Assembly (NCBI RefSeq): GCF_006345805.1
Contig: NW_021835720.1
Location: 1-38,915, forward strand
Reading direction: 5' to 3'
From: Octopus sinensis
Taxonomy: Eukaryota
Length of the DNA stretch: 38,915 nucleotides
In this document: positions 1,143-38,915 of the stretch, piece by piece
Position numbering within the stretch: the first letter of the stretch is position 1
Layout of the letters: each line of letters starts with the position of its first letter
Notes under the pieces: model-generated
What the model was told of the DNA's origin: nothing
The model's input: only the letters and a program-made list of their open reading frames with translations
Database searches by the model: none
Position numbers and translations under genes: made by a program

Positions 1143-1809
<667 letters not shown>

Positions 1810-6077: not shown

Positions 6078-6796
6078 TAATGATGTGTAGGGCATTGCCC
6101 ATGGGCTCATCGTAGACAACATGAAGACAGGGACCTTCACTGCTGGCTAGCTAGTTAGTGAGCTGGTCCAGGAAAGGGAATTCCGGCCGTGCAAGATGAA
6201 GTCTTAAATCAAACATTTTTCTGAAAGGTAGAGGTGAAGTGTGGTGTAAACTTGTGTGGGTATACCAATGTTTCAACACCTCAATGAACTCTGACCCCTG
6301 TAAACATTGACATTAAATGTCTGACAGTGTTCATGTTGTAATATTTACAATGTTGAATTACTATGTCACTTGACTATCCTCTTTATCTTACTGTTTCTTT
6401 TTCTGTTTCAGACTATCACATCATGTTGACATAAAAGGAATTACTTCGTTCAGATGTGCCTTTGATATTTTTATCAACTTTCATCAACTAAAGGAAGACG
6501 ATATATTTATAAGTAGCCTTCATCTATACATCAACGTTTCTATATAAATATAATCTATGACAAACAACAGTGAAATATATTTCTTGTCTTCACTGTCTGG
6601 AATGTAGAGGAGGTGATTGCTTTACAAGTTTGGATAACTTTACAAACGAGTTGACAGTTTTCACCTGTTGATTTAGGTATTAAGTAAGATCACAGATGAA
6701 AGAAAGATTAACATTAAATTATTCTCTGAAAAAACTGATGCAAATGAACACAAACATATTCATGGAAAGGAAAAAAACAGTATTATTGTGATATAT

Positions 6797-8380
6797 ATGA
6801 CAAATTATCCTGTCATAATGAATAAGTTAACTGAACCTAAAAACTCTGATACAAGAGAGAAACGATATCGTTGTGATATCTGTGGTAAATCATTCTCTAG
6901 AAATTGTCACTTGACTACACATAAACGTATTCATACTGGAGAGAAACCATATCATTGTGATATCTGTGGTAAATCATTCTCTAGAAATAGTCACTTGACT
7001 ATACATCAACATATTCATACAGGAGAGAAACCATATCGTTGTGATATCTGTGGTAAATCTTTCTCTCAAAATAGTGGCTTGACTATCCATAAACGTGTTC
7101 ATACAGGAGAGAAACCTCATCATTGTGATATCTGTGGTGAATCATTCTCTCAAAAAAGTCACTTCTCTATTCACAAATGTATTCATACAGGAGAGAAGCC
7201 ATATTGTTGTAATATCTGTGGTAAATCATTTTCTGATAATGGCAATTTAACTCGACATAAACGTATTCATACAGGAGAGAAACCATATCATTGTGATATC
7301 TGTGGTAAATCATTTACTGAAAGTGGTCACTTGAATAAGCACAAGCGTATTCATACAGGAGAAAAGCCATATCATTGTGATACCTGTGGCAAGTCATTCT
7401 CTGAAAGTGGTGTCTTAACTAAACACCAGCGCATTCATACAGGAGAGAAGCCATTTCATTGTAAGATCTGTGGCAAATCATTCTCTTGTAATAGTCATTT
7501 GACTACTCATAGACGTCTTCATACTGGGGAAAAACCATATCACTGTGATATCTGTGGTAAAACATTCTCTCGAAGAATTCACTTGTCTGATCATAAACGT
7601 ATTCATACAGGAGAGAAACCTCATCATTGTGATATCTGTGGTGAATCATTCTCTCAAAAAAGTAACTTCTCTATTCACAAACGTATTCATACAGGAGAGA
7701 AGCCATATTGTTGTAATATCTGTGGTGAATCATTCATTGCAAGTGGTAGCTTGAATAAACACAAGCGCATTCATACAGGAGAGAAACCATATCATTGTAA
7801 TACCTGTGGTGAATCATTTTCTGATAATAGCACTTTAACTCAACATAAACGTGTTCATACAGGGGAAAAACCATATCATTGTGATATCTGTGGTAAATCA
7901 TTTTCTCATAATAGCACTTTAACTAAACATAAACGTATTCATACAGGAGAGAAACCATATCATTGTGATATCTGTGGTAAATCATTCTCTGAAAATAGCC
8001 ATTTGATTTGTCACAAACATATTCATACTGGAGAAAAACCATATCATTGTGATATATGTGGTAAATCATTTTTTGACAGTGGTAACTTGAATAGGCATAA
8101 GCGTGTTCATACAGGAGAGAAACCATATCATTGTGATATCTGTGGTAAATCATTTTTTGACAGTGGTAACTTGAATAGGCATAAGCGTGTTCATACAGGA
8201 GAGAAACCATATCATTGTGATATCTGTGGTAAATCATTTTTTGACAGTGGTAACTTGAATAGGCATAAGCGTATTCATACAGGAGAGAAACCATATCATT
8301 GTAATATCAGTGGTAAATCATTCTCTGGAAGAAGTGTCCTAACTAAACACCAGTGCAGGACAGAAACCATATCATTGTGA
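6797..8380 (+). CDS. C2H2 zinc-finger protein ZNF-B (17 intact fingers plus 1 degenerate; no KRAB/SCAN recognised)
   Basis: Uninterrupted ORF 6788-8380 (first ATG at 6797) of 28-aa CxxCGKSF...HxxxHTGEKP repeats. Candidate acceptor TTCTGTTTCAG ends at 6411. Confidence 0.92.
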
Positions 8381-9655: not shown

Positions 9656-9882
9656 AAGAATTTTTTGCGTAATAAGATAAAAAACCAAGGCTGTATAGAT
9701 ATTAGGGCATTTATAGATAGGTCTTACAGCATCTTTTCTAGGATATTAATTAATAATATCCCTTCATCGGAGACAGTGTGAGAGGAAAAATTAATATCCT
9801 AGAAACAGCTGTAAGACCTATCTATAAATGCTCTAATATCTATACAGCCTTGGTTTTTTATCTTATTACACAAAAAATTCTT
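9656..9882. mobile_element. Hairpin MITE, ~95-bp arms with 37-nt spacer
   Basis: 9656-9751 is the near-perfect reverse complement of 9789-9882; sits in TA-rich flanks. Confidence 0.85.
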
Positions 9883-10424
9883 CTATACACACGCTGAGAT
9901 AGAACCAACGTTGAACCCTTTATTTGCAATATTACCGATTCTGGAACTTAACTATAGTCTGTCTATAGCACTTATTCAGCATTACCTGTGGGTCTCAATG
10001 ACACCATTATCTCTATCTATAATTTATATGTGTGTATATATCTATATATATATATATATATAAATTATAAGATGACAAAGAAAACTCTTTGACACATCTC
10101 ATGGCTAGTCAGTACAAACGGTTCCACTGGTACTAAAATTCGTCTGATGGGCGAAAATTTATTTGACCACCATACGATCTTCACCAGCGACAACGGAAAA
10201 TAGGAAAAACCATAAAACAGATAATGTGACAATGACCATGGAACCAAAGAATGAAGATATTTATGATGTTTGTGGTGGGGGAGTTGTGTGGTCTGTGTTA
10301 CTGTAGCATAAATCGCCTCCCAGCAAACATCGTGACCTTAGAGTGTGCAGGCAAGGGAAAAGAGAAACAAAAAGAGTGTGAATTATATTGTATGTATGTG
10401 TGTGTATATATATATATATATGTA

Positions 10425-10770
10425 TACTCTTTTACTTGTTTCAGTCATTTGACTGTGGCCATGCTGGACTTATTCTTATGTAAGCCCAGTACTTATTCTA
10501 TCGGTCTCTTTTGCCGAACCACTAAGTTACGGAGACGTAAACATACCAGCATCAGTTGTCAAGCGATGTTGGGGGGACAAACACAGACACACAAGTATAT
10601 ACACATACACTTGACGGGCTTCTTTCAGTTTCCTTCTACCAAATCCACTCACAAGGCTTTGGTCGGCCCGAGGCTATAGTAGAAGACACTTGCCCAAGGT
10701 GCCAAGCAGTGGGACTGAACCTGGAACCATGTGGTTCGTAAGCAAGCTACTTACCACACAGCCACTCCTG
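10425..10770 (-). mobile_element. Family A SINE (small internal deletion)
   Basis: Homologous to 455-841. Confidence 0.9.
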
Positions 10771-11164
10771 TCTGTTCATATAGTCTATATACCTATCCGT
10801 CTGTATATTGATCTGTTTATGTACATACCTAAATGCTTACATACAAAAATAAAAAATATTTACGGGTGAGTGTGTTAAATAATAAGGCACTAAAAGAGAA
10901 TGACTCTCCCCAGACAACAGAATATGCTTCAACACACGAACTCATATAAAGAATCTTGCAAACCAAATCCAAAAACGAAATAGAACGAACATTATTTAGA
11001 ATAGAATAAAAAGGAATTAAATTAAAGTTACGTGACTTAAATTTATCCCCAATTCCCACTGAAACATCTAAGATAGTAGATCATTTTTGATATAGTGATT
11101 CTGTGGTATTTTAAAATTTGATCAAATGTAAAATTTTCATTATCATCTCGAAGTTCGTCAGATT

Positions 11165-11415
11165 CATCATCATCATCATTTAGTGTCCGCTTTCCATGCT
11201 AGCATGGGTTGGACGGTTCGACTGGGGATCTGGGAAGCCAGAAGGCTGCACCAGGCTCCGGTCTTATCTGGCAAAGTTTCTACAGCTGGATGCCCTTCCT
11301 AACGCCAATCACTCCGTGAGTGTAGTGGGTGCTTTTTACGTGCCACCTGCACTGGAGCCAGGCGAGGCTGGCATCGGCCACGGTCGGATTGGTGCATTTT
11401 ACGTGCCACCTGCAT
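11165..11415 (-). mobile_element. Family C repeat: 5'-truncated RTE LINE 3' UTR with (GAT)n tail
   Basis: Reverse complement matches 35690-35889 (GGCACGTAAAAAGCACCCACTACAC...AGGAAGGGCATCCAGCTGTAGAAAC...GATGATGAT). Confidence 0.85.
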
Positions 11416-12664: not shown

Positions 12665-13038
12665 AGCACTCCGTCGATTGCGACGATGAGGGTCCCAGCT
12701 GATACGATCAACGGAACAGCTTGCTCGTGATATTAACGTGCAAGTGGCTGAGCACTCCACAGACACGTGTACCCTTAACGTAGTTCTCGGGGATATTCAG
12801 TGTGACACAGAGAGTGACAAGGCCGGCCCTTTGAAATACAGGTACAACAGAAACAGGAAGTAAGAGTGAGAGAAAGTTGTGGTGAAAGAGTACAGCAGGG
12901 ATCACCACCATCCCCTGCCGGAGCCTCGTGGAGCTTTTAGGTGTTTTGCTCAATACACACTCACAACGCCCGGTCTGGGAATCGAAACCGCGACCCTCGA
13001 CCGCGAGTCCGCTGCCCTAACCACTGGGCCATTGCGCC
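12665..13038 (-). mobile_element. tRNA-derived SINE family D
   Basis: Minus strand begins GGCGCAATGGCCCAGTGGTTAGGGCAGCGGACTCGCGGTCGAGGGTCGCGGTTTCGATTCCC (A and B boxes), followed by a ~300-bp body. Confidence 0.8.
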
Positions 13039-13308
13039 CAGTCTCGTGTCCCGATCCTTTCTGCCTGTCCCTTTACTGACCACAGTATTTATAACAGCCA
13101 TGGCAGTTAGAAAGACAGACATGCTGCAGGAGAGATTGTGTCTAAATAGGTCAGCTTCTGTCCATTTGAACTTCGCCTGACATGGCCCAGGTCGTAGGTC
13201 AAAGGGAGATGATTTATCGTTTTTTGAAAGGACAAAGAAAATTCCTTTGGCGCCTATTGGTCGGTGGTGGCTCAGACGAGCGAGAATCCTTAGTTTCGGT
13301 TTCGAATC

Positions 13309-13461
13309 TAAGCTTGGTGATAATGTCTTCACAATCAACCTTGTCCCATCGCATAATTTAAGAGGATCTAAATTTCTTGGAAGCATTATTGGGACTCCTA
13401 TCTTCGGAAAAAGTTTCTGTGGTGGAATTCCAGGTGGCTCCAGAGAATTAATGAACTCTGT
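13309..13461 (-). mobile_element. Helitron PIF1-type helicase C-terminal fragment
   Basis: [47 protein letters not shown] matches the Helitron RepHel motif EFLNSL.PPG.PPH.L.LK.G.PIMLLRNL.P..LCNGTRL.V. Confidence 0.85.
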
Positions 13462-13519
13462 TGAGTTATGGACCGCTTGGAGATGAAAATGATGATGATG
13501 TCAAGGATGTGTTTCCTCT

Positions 13520-15249
<1,730 letters not shown>

Positions 15250-15308
15250 TGTTCTATAATGTTTCTGATACTACCACAATAAATAATAAATATTTTTCTT
15301 GTCCTTTA

Positions 15309-31890: not shown

Positions 31891-31924
31891 TTACAACTAC
31901 AAGTTCCAAATATCCGTCAAATGT

Positions 31925-32560
31925 AAATAATGTTCTTTGCTAATGTCGATGTATTCCATCGTAAATGCCTCGCTGGTTATTGGTGAGGCGGCAAAGAAGT
32001 CCACTGGTTCGTTCACTTGTCTGTGTTCCAACGGAGTGGTAAAGATACTTTTGAACTGGTCATTTGGTACCTCACTGATCCTGGTTGGACTATCTGTGAG
32101 GGAGCCGTCCTTTTGGAAGAGGGGTCCTATCTTGCAGCGTACTGAGGCTGTTTCTTTTGCATAATAAAAGAACGCCTTTGGGTTTGATTTAATGTTTTTT
32201 AGAACCCAGGTTTCTTTGTCCACTCTCTCCCTCACATAGGATTGTTGCAGGCTTTTTTCAATCTCCATCAATGTTGTTTTTAGGCGGGACCTTTCGCTAC
32301 TTTTGGAATGTTGGTTGAAGCGATTTGCAACCTTTGTCCGTCTCTCGTGAGGATCTTCCTCTCCCTTGGAATCTCCTTCTTTTTTGTGTTAGCCTTGTGC
32401 TCTGGGACATATTTCTGGCATATGGCTTGCTTAACAGACATGAGATATTCTAGTTTCATGCCAATGTCTGGTGTGAAGAGACATTTTGGCCTGTACCGTC
32501 TGAGGATCTCTTTTTGGATCAATTTCCAGGCTGCTTTGTAGAAGTTCAGAAGTGAGAGAT
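31925..32560 (-). mobile_element. CR1-type LINE ORF2 fragment (endonuclease-RT linker)
   Basis: LNFYKAAWKLI...ICQKYVP...IPRERKILTR; IKSNPKAFFYYAK...KIGPL...DGSLTDSP...NDQFKSIFT. Confidence 0.8.
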
Positions 32561-33111
32561 TTTGGGTGCTTTTCGTGGTCAGCTGTGAGTTTCCTTTTTT
32601 AGATTTTGTATGAAGGCTAATGTAAAAATATTGGCTGAGAGAAATAGAAACTGTATATTGACTGACAATTGTGTCCACAAGGAGGTTCTACTTGAAAACA
32701 AAATGTGCATTTTAAGTAAGTTTCACAAAACGGAATTACAACTTTCATGTTTTGAAAAATTCCACAGGATATTTAAACTATATAACAATGGAAGTGTTTA
32801 GGGAGATGCTGGGACTTACAATAACAACAACAACAACAAATGAAATTTCAAAGTTTGTCTTTATTTCCACAGTTAATCTCGAACAACGAGGGAGCCAAAC
32901 CAATAAAGGGGTCTGCATGTGGTAGATAGATCTGCTAGAATTAGTAACCAAATCCTACTCCATTCAAAACCTATCACCTTAAAGAAGGACACATTTAACA
33001 ATGTGGTTCTGTTCTCTATACTTAGGGAAAAGACAGGATGGTCTTGAATGGAAGGCATTTGATAATAGGTCTGTGGTGAAGATAGATGTGGGACTAAGCA
33101 ACAGCAACAAT

Positions 33112-33329
33112 TTACAAAGAAATTCGATTGAATTCTGATGATAAACATTCAATTGCAATAAAACATTCAGTTCTTTCAAGAGCTTCTTTTAATATTTGAA
33201 GTGTACGTTTTGCCGGATCACAACTTTGAAACCATGTCAGAAGCATCTGGAAACTTTGTTCCCTAACGCTATGAGAATGGTCAAGCTTGATGATGTCCAG
33301 GTCATGTTGTTTAATTCCTAATTCCCTTC
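33112..33329 (-). CDS. Terminal coding exon of a death-domain protein (C-terminal part of the DD)
   Basis: Acceptor TTATTTCTTTTGCAG| (phase 1). (G)RELGIKQHDLDIIKLDHSHSVREQSFQMLLTWFQSCDPAKRTLQILKEALERTECFIAIECLSSEFNRISL* matches the DD pattern LG....I..I........EQ...ML..W.......T...L..AL. Candidate AATAAA near 32860 on the minus strand. Confidence 0.88.
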
Positions 33330-34659
33330 CTGCAAAAGAAATAAGAAATAATTGCAACAGCATTAATGATAATATAAAACCTGTATTAATTACGACAAAG
33401 AAATTATGTGAATAGAAGAATGAGAGATACTTAAGAAACAGGGAAATTAGAAGACATTGTTATCTATCTCTAAAGATGTTGATAAAAATAGCAAAGAATT
33501 TGAAAAAAAAGGCTGGAGAAGGAGAAGAATATTTTAAAAAAATTAATTGAAAATTACACAAGAGAAAATGCCTGGTGAACAACTGGCAGAAGAAGTGTAT
33601 GAGAGCCTAAAGAATCAACAAAGACCACCAATAGTTAGATAATTTTATCCATCTGTCCATCTTCTCTGGGCTCTATTCATAGGAGAGTTTTAGGGGTAGA
33701 GTCTTCAGGCACCTCCTTCATGCAATTCTATCAGAAGCAACCTTCATTAGAAGTTCTGAAAGGATTTCCAAACATGACCAATTGAAACTATGGATATCAT
33801 CCAACCATTTCATTCTTGCTCTACCCCTAGGTCTCCTGTCGGTTGGCTCAGCTTGAAGAATCCCTCTTGTGGTTCTTTCCTGTGATATTTTAATCACATG
33901 CCAGGATTACTGGAGCTGTGAATTCTCAATGCAGAGAAGCAGTCACTTGACCTGGAGAGACCCCAAATCTCCAGCCTGCACACCTTGTTGAGTAACGTTA
34001 CTCCAGAGACTCTTTGGAGGAATACAATCTCAGTCGTTTGATAACGTCATGTGATCAATGCCTGAAATAGTAATTTGTGATGTCTTTCCACCTATGATTA
34101 ATAGAAATTTCAAAATTATCAACATTTAAAAATATTTCAAAAATGGGGATTGTGAACCTAAATGATTTCAACCACACAAAGTAAAAATAAAATACTGTTA
34201 GGTAAATATCACATATTATAGAGGGCACTGGCTTAAGGTTTTTGGATTCATGACTTATAACAAGAACTTCTTTCATTGGATCAAGGCCACAATTTCGAAG
34301 AATTTAATACAGGAGAGGCCTTAGCAATGAGAAGAGTTTTAGTTTGTAGGCAATAAGACAAGAATCACCAACATCTACGCCATACACCTACAACACTTGG
34401 GTCCTGAAAGAATCACTGCATCCACAAACAAGCAAGTTTACAGGGAGGGCAGGTTAGGGTTAGGGAAGGACTTTGTAAGTAGCAGATATACAGGAATAGT
34501 TTGTAGTAGGAACAAGTAATAAAGGCATAGTTGATAGTTTCTGTTACCTAAGAGACAGAATTAGAAGTGGAGGAGACTATTCTGAAAGCACAGTAGTTAG
34601 AAGGAAAATGAGATGAAAAATGTACAGGGAGCTGTTAGGTCTACTGGCAACTAAGGGAT

Positions 34660-34970
34660 TCTGTTTCCAAATGAAGGAGAGATTGCAATGTTACATGGAA
34701 TGTGGAGGATGCGTGGAAACTGGCAGGAAATGAGATGAGCACACATCACTAAATGTGTAATGTTAATGCGTTGAAAATGTGGAGCCAAAAAACTGGGTCT
34801 CAGAAGAATCTGTGATAGTGTACAAGAAAAAAGATAATGGTAGAGATATAGAAGGGACATGGAGGATGAAATTGGGATAAAGAAATGCCTGGAAATCAAG
34901 TTGAAGGAAACAAGCGATCAAACTGGACAAAGGACCACAACGACTCTGGGAGAAATCGTCTGACCATTAC
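34660..34970 (+). mobile_element. Old degenerate RTE ORF2 C-terminal fragment
   Basis: AMLHG..EDAWKLAGNEMS and KLGLRRICDSVQEKR*W...MEDEIGIKKC resemble the 35105-35400 copy. Confidence 0.5.
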
Positions 34971-35104
34971 AAACTTAGAAAAATGGATGTAAGGTGATGA
35001 TGATAATGGACCTGGTGTTAGTGGATTGATTTTTGCCCAGTATATGACTGGTACATTTTGTATGATGTCCTTTCTTAATTTAGATAAATCATTTCTGAGT
35101 GCGA

Positions 35105-35889
35105 ACTTCCATGCTACATGGCAGTGAAACATGGGTCATGACTGCTGAGGACATGTTGGACATGAGAAGCATTAAATGTGGTGTGCAAGAGAGATGACTA
35201 CGCTGGTATGGTCATGTGTTACGTATGGATGAGGACAACTGTGTGAAGAAGTGCCACTTCCTAACTGTAGAAGGAACCTGTGGAAGAGGTTTAGCCAGGA
35301 AGACATGGGATGAGATGATGAAGCATGGCCTTCGAACATTGGGCCTCACAGAGGCAATGACAGGAGACCAAGATTTGGGAAATATGCTGTGATTGAGAAA
35401 ACCCGGCAACTAAAATGAGATCGTAGCCATGGCCAATGCCAGTGTTGTATGTCCGGCCCATTTAAGAGCACCCTTGATGCATTGGGTGATATGATATGCT
35501 TGAGAAGACCTGTTGAGTCAAGTAAAACCAAAATTGCAGCTGTGGCCAGTGCCCCCTGACTAGCCCCCGTTCTGGTGGCACATGAAAGCCATCATCTGAA
35601 TGTGGTGAATGCCAGTGTGATCTGACTGACTCCATGTGCTGGTGGCACGTAAAAAGGACCATCCAAATATGATCGATGCCAGGACCACCTGACTGACTTC
35701 CATGCTGGCGGCACATAAAAAGCACCCACTACATACTCAGAGCGGTTGGCATTAGGAAGGGCATCCAGCTGTAGAAACACTACCAGATCAGATTGGAGCC
35801 TGGTGCAGCCATTGGCTCTCCAGACTTCAGTCAAACCATCCAACTCATACCAGCATGGAAAATGGATGTCAAATGATGATGATGATGAT
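35105..35889 (+). mobile_element. RTE LINE 3' end: ORF2 C-terminus joined to the family C 3' UTR and (GAT)n tail
   Basis: MLHGSETWVMTAEDM/LDMRSIKCGVQER*LRWYGHVLRMDEDNCVKKC...GRGLARKTWDEM. The UTR has three ~70-bp GGTGGCAC(G/A)T..AAAG units. Confidence 0.9.
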
Positions 35890-36854
35890 TTATATCAGCT
35901 GACTCAGGGGATATTATCATGATCTCTTGAGTCAAGTCTAGTCCCCAGTATAGCTCAAATGTGCTTGTAAAGACATTTCTCTATGCTGCAGTCCATCTAG
36001 ATGTATATAGGTACCATAGGGAGGTAGAAGACATTGCTGTAAATAATAGGGGCATTGCTGTAAATAATAGTATAAATGATATTTTATGTTGTTAAACTGT
36101 CAGACAAGGGGAAATGGGATATTGTGATGTTCATGCCTTTCCATGTGACATTTGTAATGTAAAGGAGAGTGAAACGATTTCAATTAAGAAACAAAATTGA
36201 GTTGAGTTTGAATTTTCTGTTGAGATTCTTTTTTTGTAATATAAGAGAGTGTTTCATTAACTTACAATGCTGAGTTCAATCCAGCTATGAACACAATCGA
36301 CAATGGGGCCTATCTTCTATAGAGACAGGAAATATATGTTGACCTGGGACTAAAGAATTACAATAAATATAGAAAAACACAGATTGGCCAGGGGAGAGAC
36401 GACATGTCCCACACAATACACACTCTCATGTTAAAAAGTTTGCATTTGATAATGTGGTCCTCTTCACCCAAGAGAAAACATGATGGCACATCTGGAACCC
36501 TTTCCCCTTAATTCTGCCAGATTAAGGCAGATATCTGCCTCAACCTACCAGTAAGCTTACTAAAAGTGTAAACAAGCAAACACATTGTCATTAATTCACC
36601 TGTTTACTCTTAAATGACAATTTTTGAGTCCCCTTTTACAAACGATAGTATTAACTCTACTGTATCTCCTAATTTATACATTTTACAACCGTGCTGACAT
36701 TGGTGGATATTTTATGAAATTTCAGTGATATCTTTACTTTAAGCTAAACTTTCAATTGGAAATTAGGAATGGAACCTGTTCTCAGTCATTCAAACAAACA
36801 GAAGTTTAGCTGAAAGCAAAATTTATAGAAATTAATTGGGTATTTTATACTCAC

Positions 36855-36926
36855 CAAGTTCCTGCCATTTACCTGCCAACTTTTGGGACACCCTATGAAG
36901 ATGAATCTCCTCTACCGTTACAGAAT
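36855..36926 (-). CDS. 72-nt phase 1-1 exon, N-terminal part of the death domain
   Basis: TATTTATTTCAG|AT TCT GTA...GAA CTT G|GTGAGT reads (D)SVTVEEIHLHRVSQKLAGKWQEL(G); joins in frame to 33329 to give W.ELGRELG. Confidence 0.88.
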
Positions 36927-37926
36927 CTGAAATAAATATTTCCAAATTTTACACTTCATAGCACAATTTCCCTATCTCTGTAAATGGTTTATATTTTATT
37001 ATTGTAAGACATTCCTATCATCAATGGACAACTGCTGACCACTATAGGTTCGGTTGATAGATTTATATTTTCTACCGTGGTCTTATATAATGGCTCAATA
37101 TTTAGGCCCATAACAAAATAGACTGACCTTCCTAAGCCTCCTTTTTCTAATAAGACATCCTACTTAATCTAACAATGTTGCAATCATCTTATTTAATGAT
37201 CACATGTATCTCTTGTATCCATGCTAAACCTATGACATGGCATTGTCCCCTCACCACTGGACTTCACTAATCAACATTCCCCTCTTCTTTTGCTTAAATC
37301 TGATGTCAACCAAGCTGGTCATCAACGACCTTGACACAAACTCATGTCACACCTGTTATCTTTGTCAAACGTTGCTGCTTTTAATCTTTAATTTTAACTG
37401 TGCAACTCACAGTTCACCAGAATTTCATCTGATTCAGAAAATATCTAAAGACACCTTAATGAAATAGTTTCCTTTCCTGATGAGCAATGATTAGTTCTAC
37501 ACAGGTAAAACAGAAAGTGATAACAAGTATCCTAAAACTGTATACTTGCACAAAACATCTTAAATGAAACACAAATGTTCATACACCGATTATTGCAAAG
37601 GAAAAATATCTGAAATGGTATATAAGAAATGATATTCAAGAATATATAATCAAGGTGGTGATATAGAAAACAATGAGATGAGAGAAAAGTGAATGTGTCT
37701 CATTATGGGGAGAGAATCGTTTCAGGATTTATATTTTATCTTTTTTTCTATATTTTCCTTATCGTGAGGGACCTTTTTCCTATGTCTCATGATTCCATAT
37801 TTCGATAAAAATCCCTTTATTGTATATTCTTGCATTTGTAGGTAGTGAATAGAATTAATTTTATCACTAACCATTTGAAAGAAATGTAAGAATGGAACCT
37901 GTTCTCAGTCATTCACACAAATAATA

Positions 37927-38455
37927 CAGGGTGTCCCAAAAAAATGTATACACACCTTAAATAATTGTAAATTTGGGGTTTATTATAATTCGAATAATTT
38001 TCAACATGTAAAAGAATTTACAAATATCATTCTATTGTCTTGTTATCGCATGTTCTCAAACTGATGTCCGTTCTGCTCAGACACTGCTGACAACACGAAG
38101 CCATGGAATGGCACACATCATGGAACAATTCCCTTGGGATATTCGTAATTCATGTTCAATGGTTGCCCTCAATTGACGACTGTTGCATGTTTCTGTGCGT
38201 AGACTTTGTCCTTTAGGTATCCCCATAAAAAGAAGTCTAGTGGTGTGAGGTCTGGTGACGTGGAGGGTATTCACACAAACCTCTCCGTCCAATCCACCTT
38301 TTGGCAAGATCCCATCAAGAAAGGATCTACATCGCGATGGTAGTGTGGAGGTGCCCCATCTTGCTGGAAATAAAACTCTTCCTGTTCAATGTCCTCTCTA
38401 ATGCTTGCCATGACAGACGTTGCAGCAAGTGTATACAGTTTTTGGGGACACCCTG
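37927..38455 (-). mobile_element. Internally deleted mariner-like transposon with TA TSD
   Basis: TA|CAGGGTGTCCCAAAAAAATGTATACAC...GTGTATACAGTTTTTGGGGACACCCTG|TA. Internal minus-strand peptides FQQDGAPPHYH and SPDLTPLDFFLWGYLKDKVY. Confidence 0.93.
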
Positions 38456-38512
38456 TATATCTCAGGTGATGGTAAAATTTATAGAAATTTAATTACAGTT
38501 ATTTTTACTCAC

Positions 38513-38562
38513 CAAAAGATTCTGCAACCGTCTGGACTGCTTTCTCTCAGACTTTGGACACA
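38513..38562 (-). pseudogene. Microexon copy C (50 nt; 1-nt deletion relative to copies A and B)
   Basis: CTTATTTCAG| and |GTGAGT are intact, but the plus strand reads TTTCTCTCAG versus TTTCTCTTCAG in copy B. Could be a sequencing error. Confidence 0.6.
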
Positions 38563-38673
38563 CTGAAATAAGAATTGGAAATAAGAATGGAACCTTCTCA
38601 GACATTCACACAAATAATATATTTCAGGTGAAGGTAAAATTTATAGAAATTATTACAGTTATTTTATACTCAC

Positions 38674-38724
38674 CAAAAGATTCTGCAACCGTCTGGACTG
38701 CTTTCTCTTCAGACTTTGGACACA
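38674..38724 (-). CDS. Microexon copy B (51 nt, phase 1-1): (V)CPKSEEKAVQTVAESF
   Basis: CTTATTTCAG|TGTGTCCAAAG...TCTTTTG|GTGAGT. Confidence 0.75.
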
Positions 38725-38839
38725 CTGAAATAAGAATTGGAAATTAAGAATGGAACCTGTTCTCAGACATTCACACAAATAATATATTTCAGGTGAAGGT
38801 AAAATTTATAGAAATCAATTACAGTTATTTTATACTCAC

Positions 38840-38890
38840 CAACAGACTCTGCAACTGCCTGGGCTGCTTCTTCTTCAGACTTTGGACACA
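38840..38890 (-). CDS. Microexon copy A (51 nt, phase 1-1): (x)CPKSEEEAAQAVAESV
   Basis: CTTATTTCAG|TGTGTCCAAAG...TCTGTTG|GTGAGT. Confidence 0.75.
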
Positions 38891-38915
38891 CTGAAATAAG
38901 CATTTCAAAGTTTAT

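What the first reader, a model, noticed from the sequence alone, without database searches (positions are those of the whole stretch)
33112..38915. Death-domain gene fed by a tandem array of in-frame 51-nt microexons: a potentially length-variable adaptor or receptor
On the minus strand, ~165-bp genomic units each hold one 17-codon phase 1-1 exon with perfect AG and GTGAGT sites. Copies A and B splice to xCPKSEEEAAQAVAESV-VCPKSEEKAVQTVAESF, then DSVTVEEIHLHRVSQKLAGKWQEL-GRELGIKQHDLD...QMLLTWF...LKEAL, a complete C-terminal death domain. Symmetric exons can be skipped or gained without frameshift, so splicing or copy-number change would alter the length of a Cys-containing, acidic, probably helical linker before the DD. 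The array reaches the window edge and probably continues. C-terminal DDs are typical of death receptors and FADD/IMD/RIP-type adaptors, but I know of no described member with this architecture. This is the best candidate for an undescribed system here.
Basis: partly seen in the sequence, partly recalled or inferred. Interest (0 to 1): 0.88.

Follow-up and report, generated by a model that had tools for sequence, protein, structure and literature searches.

The report
Octopus RING–death-domain gene with cassette-exon linker
The region is the 3' end of one member of a large Octopus-only family of ankyrin/RING/death-domain proteins whose linker is built from tandemly duplicated 51-nt cassette exons; database gene models already contain these exons, but I found no paper describing the family.

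Summary
On the minus strand there are two intact 51-nt phase 1-1 exons, a third copy with a 1-nt deletion, and a two-exon death domain (Pfam Death, E=8e-11).

The interpretation needs correcting.
- The window is a whole 38.9-kb contig of the Octopus sinensis assembly, and it ends inside the array.
- The Octopus vulgaris counterpart and O. sinensis paralogs show the full gene: ankyrin repeats, an IAP/MIB-type RING, n × 17-aa cassettes, then the death domain. It is cytosolic and E3-ligase-like, not a receptor or a FADD/IMD-type adaptor.
- RefSeq already models these exons. Isoforms of one paralog differ only in which cassettes they include.
- AlphaFold2 predicts the linker to be disordered, not helical.

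New findings:
- The 51-nt unit is a shortened duplicate of the first death-domain exon together with its introns.
- Arrays range from 2.7 to at least 9 copies and contain decayed units.
- Cassette exons are about four times more diverged than their own introns, yet they stay stop-free.
- Death-domain exons are mosaics among near-identical loci.
- All close relatives are Octopus, and the genome holds at least 102 related death-domain exons.

No transcript reads could be checked.

The parts
38456..38915 (-). Tandem array of 166-bp units (51-nt exon + 115-nt intron), 2.7 copies, running off the contig end
   Evidence: Tandem Repeats Finder: period 166, 2.7 copies, 93% matches. The window is the whole contig C12191.
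38840..38890 (-). Cassette exon A, 51 nt, phase 1-1, (V)CPKSEEEAAQAVAESV
   Evidence: AG acceptor and GTGAGTA donor.
38674..38724 (-). Cassette exon B, 51 nt, phase 1-1, VCPKSEEKAVQTVAESF
   Evidence: The peptide is identical to a unit in RefSeq XP_029656409.1 and to O. vulgaris units.
38513..38562 (-). Decayed cassette exon C, 50 nt (1-nt deletion). Splice sites are intact, but inclusion shifts the frame into stops.
   Evidence: Similar 50- and 49-nt units at the C10179 locus are left out of the RefSeq models.
37927..38455 (-). 529-bp internally deleted mariner-type element in the intron after unit C. It has a TA target duplication, about 27/30-matched terminal inverted repeats and a transposase remnant (FYFQQDGAPPHYHRDV...).
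   Evidence: Absent from C10766 and from the O. vulgaris locus.
36927..37260 (-). Intron segment upstream of DD exon 1, homologous (about 70%) to the segment upstream of the first 51-nt unit in paralogs
   Evidence: blastn of window-oriented 1710-2225 against C27a 9794-10221, 10742-11289 and 13998-14842; alignment.
36855..36926 (-). Death-domain exon 1, 72 nt, phase 1-1, DSVTVEEIHLHRVSQKLAGKWQEL. This exon is the progenitor type of the 51-nt units.
36754..36854 (-). Intron segment downstream of DD exon 1, homologous (83%) to the 115-nt unit intron
33112..33329 (-). Death-domain exon 2, 218 nt including the TAA stop (33112-33114). It encodes GRELGIKQHDLD...SSEFNRISL.
   Evidence: It is 0/218 different from the O. 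vulgaris exon, while the flanking introns differ by about 2.5%.

Best explanation
The region is the 3' part of one copy of an Octopus-specific, highly expanded gene family. The family encodes cytosolic proteins with N-terminal ankyrin repeats, one IAP/MIB-type RING finger, a modular linker and a C-terminal death domain related to those of TNFR1, RIPK1 and CRADD.

The linker is encoded by tandem 166-bp units. Each unit holds one symmetric (phase 1-1) 51-nt exon with strong splice sites. The units arose by duplication of the first death-domain exon (72 nt) together with its flanking introns, followed by two in-frame deletions (12 + 9 nt) and amplification by unequal crossing-over.

Unit number differs between near-identical loci, and some units decay to 50 or 49 nt. 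Database gene models show intact units being included in different combinations, so products differ in 17-aa steps.

Inferred mechanism:
- The ankyrin repeats bind a target.
- The RING recruits an E2~ubiquitin.
- The death domain plugs the ligase into helical death-domain signalling assemblies.
- The disordered, charged cassette linker sets the reach between RING and death domain, or carries variable sites.

Shown here: the exon anatomy, the domain identities, the origin of the unit, the copy-number differences, the annotated isoforms, the predicted disorder, and the fast exon and slow intron divergence. Inferred only: E3 activity, death-domain oligomerisation, an immune or cell-death role, and what linker length does.
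For: Anatomy and death domain:
- The window is a whole contig of the 13,516-scaffold, 2.72-Gb O. sinensis assembly (PMC10700109 table).

Full architecture in relatives:
- Pfam finds Ank + zf-C3HC4_3 + Death in relatives.
- The O. vulgaris locus is collinear at 95-98% identity. It has ANK exons, a RING exon, 6 units, DD exon 1 and an identical DD exon 2.
- C10766, C10179 and the C27 loci have the same layout.

Cassette use and copy number:
- Isoforms differ only by cassettes.
- Arrays range from 2.7 to at least 9 copies.

Origin of the unit:
- Intron-exon-intron alignment puts the unit on DD exon 1, with about 70% identical flanks and two in-frame gaps.

Frame and coding constraint:
- 27 of 30 units are exactly 51 nt. 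There are 0 stops in 25 full-length units against 4.5 expected, P=0.006.
- DD exon 2 is 0/218 different from O. vulgaris while introns differ by 2.5%, P about 0.004.

Structure (paralog isoform, AlphaFold2):
- DD pLDDT is about 85, RING 70-80, linker about 25 with no secondary structure.
- Foldseek matches the DD to the ankyrin-G, FADD and RIPK1 DDs (TM 0.7-0.8). It matches the RING to the IDOL, cIAP and XIAP RINGs.
- phmmer against PDB sequences finds the TNFR1 DD at 4e-7, then CRADD and RIPK1.

Family size and range:
- At least 102 related DD exons occur in the genome.
- All close relatives are Octopus.

Functional precedent:
- MIB2 ubiquitylates RIPK1 in TNF signalling (PMC5912950).
Against: - No transcript reads could be inspected. 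Cassette inclusion rests on Gnomon and EVM/PASA gene models, and short-read junctions among near-identical tandem exons can be mis-assigned.
- The only model on record at the O. vulgaris counterpart locus (CAI9744116.1) joins ANK exons straight to DD exon 2. It skips the RING, all units and DD exon 1.
- In this window the RING and ANK exons are not present, because the contig ends.
- One unit is frameshifted and a transposon sits in the adjacent intron.
- Collinearity with the other loci stops about 860 bp 3' of the stop codon. This particular copy could therefore be a truncated duplicate or an assembly product.
- The structure prediction used a paralog and a shallow 15-sequence alignment.
Confidence: 0.72

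Rival explanations
1. The window copy is a dead or artefactual fragment. It would be a truncated segmental duplicate, a haplotig or a chimeric contig of a functional locus elsewhere, and it would make no protein of its own.
For: - The contig ends inside the array.
- Unit C is frameshifted, and there is a mariner insertion.
- Homology with C10766 and the O. vulgaris locus ends abruptly at window position ~32249, inside a LINE-like ORF.
- Three O. sinensis contigs (C12191, C10766, C10179) are 97-98% alike.
- No RefSeq O. sinensis protein with this exact DD exon turned up.
Against: - DD exon 2 is nucleotide-identical to the O. vulgaris exon while the flanking introns differ by 2.5% (P about 0.004).
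- DD exon 1 and units A and B are intact with consensus splice sites.
- Decayed units are also present in loci that have RefSeq models, and those models simply skip them.
- The mariner insertion is intronic.
Confidence: 0.25
2. The cassettes are hypervariable functional modules, not a passive spacer. They would be recognition, decoy or regulatory peptides under diversifying selection. Combinatorial splicing and rapid array turnover would then give an individual a repertoire of variant E3/adaptor proteins, in the way diversified invertebrate immune genes do.
For: - Exon diversity is 0.150 against 0.039 for the unit's own intron.
- 10 of 51 exon sites against 3 of 115 intron sites have minor-allele frequency >= 0.2 (Fisher p = 5e-4).
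- Between the two unit types (CPKS/F, net charge -1; CPxC, net charge +2), exon divergence is 0.189 and intron divergence 0.035.
- The frame is nonetheless preserved.
- DD exon 1 shows pN 0.126 against pS 0.032 between near-identical loci. DD exon 2 is a 10-14% divergent patch inside 1.5-2.5% divergent introns.
- The expansion is lineage-specific.
Against: - pN/pS in the units is about 0.9, not above 1, and synonymous sites are elevated too. That pattern fits old variants kept while introns are homogenised, or gene conversion, as well as it fits positive selection.
- The sample is 25-30 non-independent units.
- There are no expression or binding data.
- The linker is predicted disordered.
Confidence: 0.2
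3. In paralogs whose units carry CPxC, adjacent units pair up (C-x2-C-x13-C-x2-C) to bind zinc. The linker would then be a string of small zinc knuckles rather than a disordered spacer.
For: - 7 of the 25 full-length units read CP[KR]C or CLMC.
- Runs of four such units occur directly after the RING's last CPxC, for example in O. vulgaris P0001.
- The first Cys is invariant in 25 of 25 units.
Against: - The window's own units are CPKS, with a single Cys, as are most units.
- No Pfam family matches the linker.
- AlphaFold2 gives pLDDT of about 25 and no structure for a linker with two adjacent CPxC units.
- The RING exon tail and its intron show no DNA homology to the unit. The unit derives from a death-domain exon instead.
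Confidence: 0.1
4. The annotated cassette isoforms are read-mapping or prediction artefacts. In vivo, every intact unit of a locus is constitutively spliced in, or none is, and only gene copy number varies linker length.
For: - Units 2 and 3 of LOC115225502 encode identical peptides, so short-read junctions are ambiguous.
- The isoforms are computational models.
- I could not inspect reads.
Against: - Isoforms X16 and X17 use different, distinguishable single units (VCPKCEEKAVKTVVESV against VCPKFEEKAVQTVAESV) joined to the same flanking exons.
- The same stepwise pattern appears in independent annotations of O. bimaculoides, in more divergent family members whose units are not near-identical.
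Confidence: 0.2

Closest known systems
Mind bomb E3 ligases (MIB1/MIB2), the source of the RefSeq name 'MIB2-like'
   Same: - Ankyrin repeats are followed by a C-terminal zf-C3HC4_3 RING.
- MIB2 acts on death-domain signalling by ubiquitylating RIPK1 in the TNF receptor complex (PMC5912950).
   Different: - Pfam found no MIB/HERC2, ZZ or REP domains.
- There is a single RING.
- The RING is followed by a cassette linker and a death domain, which no MIB protein has (my knowledge).
cIAP1/cIAP2 (BIRC2/3), XIAP and IDOL RING ligases
   Same: - These are the closest solved RING folds: IDOL at 33-35% identity, then cIAP1/2 and XIAP.
- cIAPs also combine a death-fold domain (CARD) with this RING type and work in TNFR complexes (my knowledge).
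   Different: - The Octopus proteins have no BIR, UBA or FERM domains.
- The death-fold domain is a DD, not a CARD, and lies C-terminal to the RING.
- In IAPs and IDOL the RING is at the extreme C-terminus.
Ankyrins and ANKDD1-type proteins (ANK repeats + death domain)
   Same: - They combine ANK repeats with a C-terminal DD.
- The ankyrin-G and ankyrin-1 DDs are the top structural matches (TM 0.79-0.85 on the target).
   Different: - They have no RING, and the Octopus proteins have no ZU5-UPA module.
- Sequence identity to the ankyrin DDs is only 20-24%.
Arrays of short symmetric exons encoding repeated peptide modules (titin PEVK exons, 54-bp fibrillar-collagen exons, schistosome micro-exon genes)
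   Same: They share tandemly duplicated, frame-neutral short exons whose number and inclusion set the length or composition of an extended segment (my knowledge of those systems).
   Different: - The protein context is different.
- Here the unit is a derivative of a domain-coding exon (DD exon 1) and sits between two signalling domains.
- Here the introns are more conserved than the exons.
Lineage-specific expansions of death-fold/TRADD-N/TIR immune adaptors in marine invertebrates (amphioxus, sea urchin, oysters)
   Same: This is also a large, species-group-restricted expansion with unusual domain combinations that include ankyrin repeats and ubiquitin-system domains (PMC8195603).
   Different: - That paper says cephalopods have very few or no TRADD-N proteins (no such expansion). 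This is a death-domain expansion in Octopus.
- The ANK-RING-cassette-DD architecture was not in the passages of that paper my term search returned.

Membership tests
Death domain (Pfam PF00531, death-fold superfamily) | Sequence match to the family profile above the curated threshold | tested here: met
   The window's spliced product scores 42.4 bits against a cut-off of 22.6, E=8e-11. phmmer against PDB sequences finds the TNFR1 DD at 4e-7, then CRADD and RIPK1.
Death domain (Pfam PF00531, death-fold superfamily) | Six-helix bundle fold | tested here: met
   The AlphaFold2 model of paralog isoform P0154 has helices at 264-341 with pLDDT of about 85. Foldseek gives TM 0.7-0.85 to the ankyrin, FADD and RIPK1 DDs. 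This was modelled on a paralog, not on the window sequence.
Death domain (Pfam PF00531, death-fold superfamily) | Homotypic oligomerisation with other death domains | not testable with these tools
   This needs pull-down, filament or SEC-MALS experiments.
RING E3 ligase, zf-C3HC4_3 (IAP/MIB/IDOL type) | RING finger present in the same gene | tested here: inconclusive
   The RING is not in the window, because the contig ends in the array. It is present 0.85-3.7 kb upstream of the array in the collinear O. vulgaris locus and in C10766, C10179 and C27a/b. Pfam PF13920 scores 39-41 bits against a cut-off of 27 in family proteins.
Mind bomb (MIB1/MIB2) family | N-terminal MIB/HERC2 domains, ZZ finger and REP region | tested here: not met
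   Pfam scans of full-length members P0001, P0004 and P0007 found only Ank, RING and Death families.
Death receptors (TNFRSF) | Signal peptide, cysteine-rich extracellular repeats and a transmembrane helix N-terminal to the DD | tested here: not met
   Full-length relatives start with ankyrin repeats. No 19-residue window reaches a TM-like hydropathy outside the ANK helices (maximum 0.9-1.8). There are no TNFR Pfam hits.
FADD / IMD / RIP-type adaptors | A DED (FADD), a kinase domain or RHIM (RIPK1), or the IMD N-terminal region alongside the DD | tested here: not met
   No such Pfam families were found in family proteins. The RefSeq label 'RIPK1' on some short Octopus relatives reflects only the DD.
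Alternatively spliced cassette-exon array | Frame-neutral exons with functional splice sites | tested here: met
   The exons are 51 nt, phase 1-1, with AG/GTGAGTA sites. 27 of 30 units keep the length, and none of the 25 full-length units tested has a stop.
Alternatively spliced cassette-exon array | Different subsets of units in transcripts of one locus | tested here: inconclusive
   This is met at the level of RefSeq models (LOC115225502 X5/8/10/13/16/17; the C10179 locus; O. bimaculoides). I could not examine transcript reads.

The most novel reading that the evidence does not exclude
Octopuses carry a private, rapidly evolving family of death-domain E3 ligases. Their linker cassettes and death-domain exons would be diversified by unequal crossing-over, exon-scale gene conversion and combinatorial splicing, while the introns stay nearly constant. 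That would be a germline-plus-splicing diversification system for innate immune or cell-death signalling, comparable in logic to Dscam-hv or the sea-urchin 185/333 genes, in a lineage thought to lack such adaptor expansions.
Probability: 0.2. Interest if true: 0.8.

Novelty: new variant of a known kind. Interest (0 to 1): 0.55.

Why it matters
- Death-domain adaptors and RING ligases are core parts of animal cell-death and innate immune signalling, and cephalopod immunity is poorly charted.
- One comparative study says cephalopods have very few or no TRADD-N death-fold-associated adaptors, unlike the expansions seen in sessile marine invertebrates (PMC8195603).
- Here there is an Octopus-restricted family with at least 102 related death-domain exons. 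Its architecture (ANK-RING-cassettes-DD) is absent from vertebrates.
- It physically fuses a MIB/IAP-type ligase module to a TNFR1/RIPK1-like death domain. In mammals those two functions meet only through complexes.
- The linker is a clear case of a new protein segment being made from duplicated copies of a domain-coding exon.
- Exons that diverge four times faster than their introns are what one sees in arms-race gene families.
- The arrays also break the assembly: two contigs end inside them. That matters for annotating this genome.

Tried and rejected
- **Unit derived from the RING tail (CPICR...).** Rejected. blastn finds no homology between the RING exon tail plus its intron and the unit. 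Homology with DD exon 1 and its flanks is clear.
- **Conserved intron explained by RNA structure.** Not supported. Folding intron-exon-intron gives z = 0.16 against shuffles.
- **Contig C11515 as the missing upstream neighbour.** It has an array of at least 9 units running off its start. This is unlikely to be the neighbour, because its RING is only about 38% identical to the P0003-type RING carried by the collinear O. vulgaris locus.
- **Simple positive selection on DD exon 2 (window against C10766).** Not supported. pS (0.158) is raised as much as pN (0.086), so a conversion or ancient-variant patch fits better.
- **Transcript-derived proteins (Logan and similar) matching the spliced 130-aa product.** None found, only O. 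vulgaris gene models.
- **Locating the window's missing 5' half.** I tried a search of the genome with the O. vulgaris RING-to-array segment.
- **Literature searches.** Searches for death domain + octopus or cephalopod, MIB2 + octopus, and ANK + RING + DD found no description of the family.

Full report
**1. What is in the sequence**

- Unit A is 38890-38840 and unit B is 38724-38674. Each is 51 nt.
- DD exon 1 is 36926-36855 (72 nt).
- DD exon 2 is 33329-33112 (218 nt with the TAA stop).
- Every exon is preceded by ...ttatttcAG and followed by GTGAGTA, and every one is phase 1-1.

Joining A+B+DD1+DD2 gives an open 130-aa product. It matches Pfam Death (PF00531) at 42.4 bits against a cut-off of 22.6, E=8e-11. 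Tandem Repeats Finder reports a 166-bp period, 2.7 copies and 93% matches at 38456-38904.

Three details were missed.
- A third unit (38562-38513) is 50 nt because of a 1-nt deletion. Including it runs into stop codons.
- A 529-bp internally deleted mariner element sits in the intron after that unit, at 37927-38455. It has a TA duplication, matching terminal inverted repeats and a transposase remnant. It is absent from the two closest loci.
- The window is an entire contig, G000:C12191:1-38915. The array ends at an assembly break, not at an arbitrary window edge.

**2. Where it comes from**

The assembly has 13,516 contigs and 2,719,151,902 bases. That matches the published Octopus sinensis assembly statistics (PMC10700109). 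RefSeq O. sinensis proteins map to the paralogous contigs. The rest of the window holds C2H2 zinc-finger genes, microsatellites and transposon remnants.

**3. The whole gene, seen in relatives**

A HMMER search of 1.84 billion representative proteins with the spliced product found 46 hits at E<=1e-10. Every close hit whose source I looked up is from Octopus.

The full-length relatives have ankyrin repeats, one zf-C3HC4_3 RING, a run of 17-aa repeats and a C-terminal death domain. tblastn places these exons in paralogous O. sinensis loci (C10766, C10179, C27:8.16 Mb, C27:10.2 Mb). The RING exon lies 0.85-3.7 kb upstream of the first 51-nt unit.

The O. vulgaris locus OX597842.1:29,577,981-29,619,969 is collinear with the window at 95-98% identity from the array to about 860 bp past the stop codon. 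It contains, in order:
- ANK exons;
- a RING exon;
- six intact units (Tandem Repeats Finder: 6.0 copies, 97% matches);
- DD exon 1;
- a DD exon 2 identical in nucleotide sequence to the window's.

So the window carries only the 3' part of such a gene. The missing 5' part should hold more units, then the RING and ANK exons.

Family proteins have no TM-like segment and no receptor, DED, kinase or MIB/HERC2 domains. The gene is therefore not a death receptor, not a FADD/IMD/RIP-type adaptor, and not a true Mind bomb orthologue, despite the RefSeq name 'MIB2-like'.

**4. Are the cassettes used, and variably?**

Six RefSeq isoforms of the paralog LOC115225502 (the C27:8.16 Mb locus) are identical except for the linker. 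I matched each linker to the genomic units of that locus.

| Isoform | Length (aa) | Linker exons included |
|---|---|---|
| X13 | 325 | units 1, 2, 3 |
| X5 | 349 | units 1, 2 or 3, 4, plus a 72-nt exon |
| X10 | 332 | units 1, 2 or 3, plus the 72-nt exon |
| X8 | 332 | units 1, 4, plus the 72-nt exon |
| X16 | 315 | unit 4, plus the 72-nt exon |
| X17 | 315 | unit 1, plus the 72-nt exon |

Other loci show the same stepwise pattern.
- The C10179 locus has units of 51, 50, 49 and 51 nt. Its RefSeq isoforms (312/295/295 aa) use only the intact ones.
- O. bimaculoides family members have isoforms of 563/545/528 and 424/407 aa that differ by 16-19-aa cassettes.

This supports skipping and inclusion without frameshift, but only at the level of computed gene models. 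I could not inspect reads, and a search for transcript-derived proteins found none. The only model on record at the O. vulgaris counterpart locus (CAI9744116.1) joins ANK exons directly to DD exon 2. That product would lack death-domain helix 1.

**5. Copy number**

Near-identical loci (97-98% in flanking introns) carry different arrays.
- The window has at least 3 units, one of them decayed.
- C10179 has 4 units, two of them decayed.
- C10766 has 5 units.
- O. vulgaris has 6 units.

Another contig, C11515, starts inside an array of at least 9.0 copies with a three-unit higher-order period. A DNA search found the unit in about 20 arrays on scaffolds C27 and C29 and on many small contigs.

**6. 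Origin of the unit**

The roughly 430 bp upstream and 110 bp downstream of the first unit are about 70% identical to the flanks of DD exon 1. They are equally close to the flanks of the extra 72-nt exon in the C27-type genes (blastn).

In the alignment the 51-nt exon lies on the 72-nt DD exon 1 with two in-frame gaps of 12 and 9 nt, in the same phase. An example is ETPKLEEKCLQDVAKLLGVNWQQV against VCPKSEEE----ATQAVA---ESV.

The cassette is therefore a shortened duplicate of the exon encoding the start of the death domain, amplified with its introns. The alternative I first favoured, origin from the RING's terminal CPxC, has no DNA support.

**7. How the units evolve**

I collected 30 unique complete units from the window, the paralogs and O. 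vulgaris.
- Nucleotide diversity is 0.150 in the exon and 0.039 in the 115-nt intron. Codon positions 1, 2 and 3 have diversities of 0.151, 0.181 and 0.118.
- Sites with minor-allele frequency >= 0.2 number 10 of 51 in the exon and 3 of 115 in the intron (Fisher p = 5e-4). pS is 0.153 and pN is 0.135.
- Two unit types exist: CPKS/CPKF with net charge -1, and CPxC with net charge +2. Between the types the exons differ by 0.189 but the introns by only 0.035, no more than within a type.
- 27 of 30 units keep exactly 51 nt. None of the 25 full-length units tested has a stop, where random substitution at the observed density predicts 4.5 (P=0.006).

The peptide sequence is thus free or driven to change while the reading frame is kept. 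The introns are either homogenised or constrained. RNA structure does not explain the intron conservation (z=0.16).

**8. The death-domain exons are mosaics**

- The window's DD exon 2 is 0/218 different from O. vulgaris, where introns differ by 2.5% (P about 0.004).
- The same exon is 22/218 different from C10766, where introns differ by 1.7%. Both pS (0.158) and pN (0.086) are raised.
- The window's DD exon 1, by contrast, is identical to C10766's. It differs at 8 of 75 sites from O. vulgaris and C10179, almost all of them replacements (pN 0.126, pS 0.032).
- An O. vulgaris paralog (P0190) carries yet another combination of the DD exon 2 variants.

This points to exon-scale gene conversion or recombination among copies, plus purifying selection on the version found here.

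**9. Structure**

I ran AlphaFold2 on isoform X5 of LOC115225502 with a 15-sequence family alignment.
- The RING has pLDDT 70-80 and the death domain about 85, with helices at 264-341.
- The 75 residues encoded by the three cassettes and the 72-nt exon have pLDDT of about 25 and no secondary structure.

This argues for a disordered linker and against 'probably helical'. The caveats are the shallow alignment and the use of a paralog.

Foldseek matches the death domain to the ankyrin-G, FADD, RIPK1 and TRADD DDs. It matches the RING to the IDOL, cIAP and XIAP RINGs. By sequence, the closest solved death domains are TNFR1, CRADD and RIPK1.

**10. Most likely function**

Taken together, the protein looks like a cytosolic RING E3 ligase. 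Ankyrin repeats would bind a partner, and a death domain would insert it into helical death-domain assemblies. A disordered cassette linker of adjustable length lies between the RING and the death domain.

Mammalian MIB2 ubiquitylates RIPK1 within the TNF receptor complex (PMC5912950). The Octopus architecture fuses those two kinds of module in one chain.

E3 activity, death-domain assembly, an immune or cell-death role and the effect of linker length are all inference.

**11. Distribution and novelty**

- At least 102 places in the genome match the window's DD exon 2 at E<=1e-6, concentrated on scaffolds C27 and C29 and on unplaced contigs.
- Every close relative I looked up is from O. sinensis, O. 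vulgaris or O. bimaculoides. The one more distant hit I checked (31% identity) is an amphioxus multi-death-domain protein.
- Literature searches found no description of the family or of the cassette array.
- One comparative paper says cephalopods have very few or no TRADD-N death-fold-associated adaptors, that is, no expansion of them (PMC8195603).
- The gene models themselves are already in RefSeq and ENA.

I rate this as a new variant of known kinds: death-domain proteins, RING ligases and cassette-exon arrays. It is not categorically new.

**12. Limits**

- Whether C12191, C10766 and C10179 are alleles, haplotigs or recent duplicates is unresolved.
- Collinearity of the window with the other loci ends at about 32,249, inside a LINE-like ORF. 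A rearranged or chimeric contig therefore cannot be excluded.

Noticed in passing
window 37927-38455: 529-bp internally deleted mariner-type element. It has a TA target-site duplication, about 27/30-matched terminal inverted repeats and a transposase remnant (FYFQQDGAPPHYHRDV..., LDFFLWGYLKDKVY). It is present here but absent from the same intron in contig C10766 and in O. vulgaris, so it is a recent, copy-specific insertion.
   Followed up: yes
window ~32249 (about 860 bp 3' of the stop codon): Collinearity with the O. vulgaris locus and with C10766/C10179 stops abruptly inside a LINE-like ORF (window ORFs 31897-32388 and 32280-32687, minus strand, no Pfam hit). Those three loci stay 97-98% alike beyond the point. 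This could be a duplication boundary, a transposon-mediated rearrangement or a chimeric contig.
   Followed up: partly
window 1435-1809 (+), 6677-8380 (+), 13571-15270 (-): C2H2 zinc-finger open reading frames. The largest is 567 aa with about 17 fingers. The two minus-strand ORFs share duplicated blocks. They are typical of the Octopus zinc-finger expansion.
   Followed up: partly
window 12964-13500 (-): ORF fragment matching the Pif1 helicase 2B domain (PF21530, E=8.5e-12). It is probably a Helitron-type transposon remnant.
   Followed up: no
L017 (G000:C11515:1-1488): A second O. sinensis contig begins inside a cassette array of at least 9.0 copies, with a 495-bp (three-unit) higher-order period. 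ANK exons and a divergent RING exon lie upstream. These arrays evidently break the assembly.
   Followed up: partly
L019/L020 (G000:C10179, units at oriented 8163 and 8323): Two adjacent decayed units of 50 and 49 nt sum to 99 nt. Including both together would restore the frame. I did not check whether the shifted stretch is stop-free.
   Followed up: no
P0044/P0194 (O. bimaculoides XP_014788728.1, XP_052821851.1): An adhesion-GPCR-like protein ('GPR126-like', 1283-1535 aa) ends in a death domain 39% identical to the window's. Octopus therefore also has membrane receptors carrying this death-domain clade.
   Followed up: no
P0025 (O. sinensis XP_036371385.1): A family member whose linker is built from a longer repeat of about 26 aa (APKFEDRCVQTEAICQELGAASQAIE, four copies) before the death domain. 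It suggests a second, independently amplified cassette type.
   Followed up: no
L011/L012 and L013/L014 (C27:10.2 Mb and C27:8.16 Mb loci): These paralogs carry an extra 72-nt phase 1-1 exon (ESLNLEENRSHSTSKKVEVKQQKV) between the array and DD exon 1, with the same flanking intron sequences. It is a full-length but diverged duplicate of DD exon 1, and it looks like the intermediate between that exon and the 51-nt unit.
   Followed up: yes
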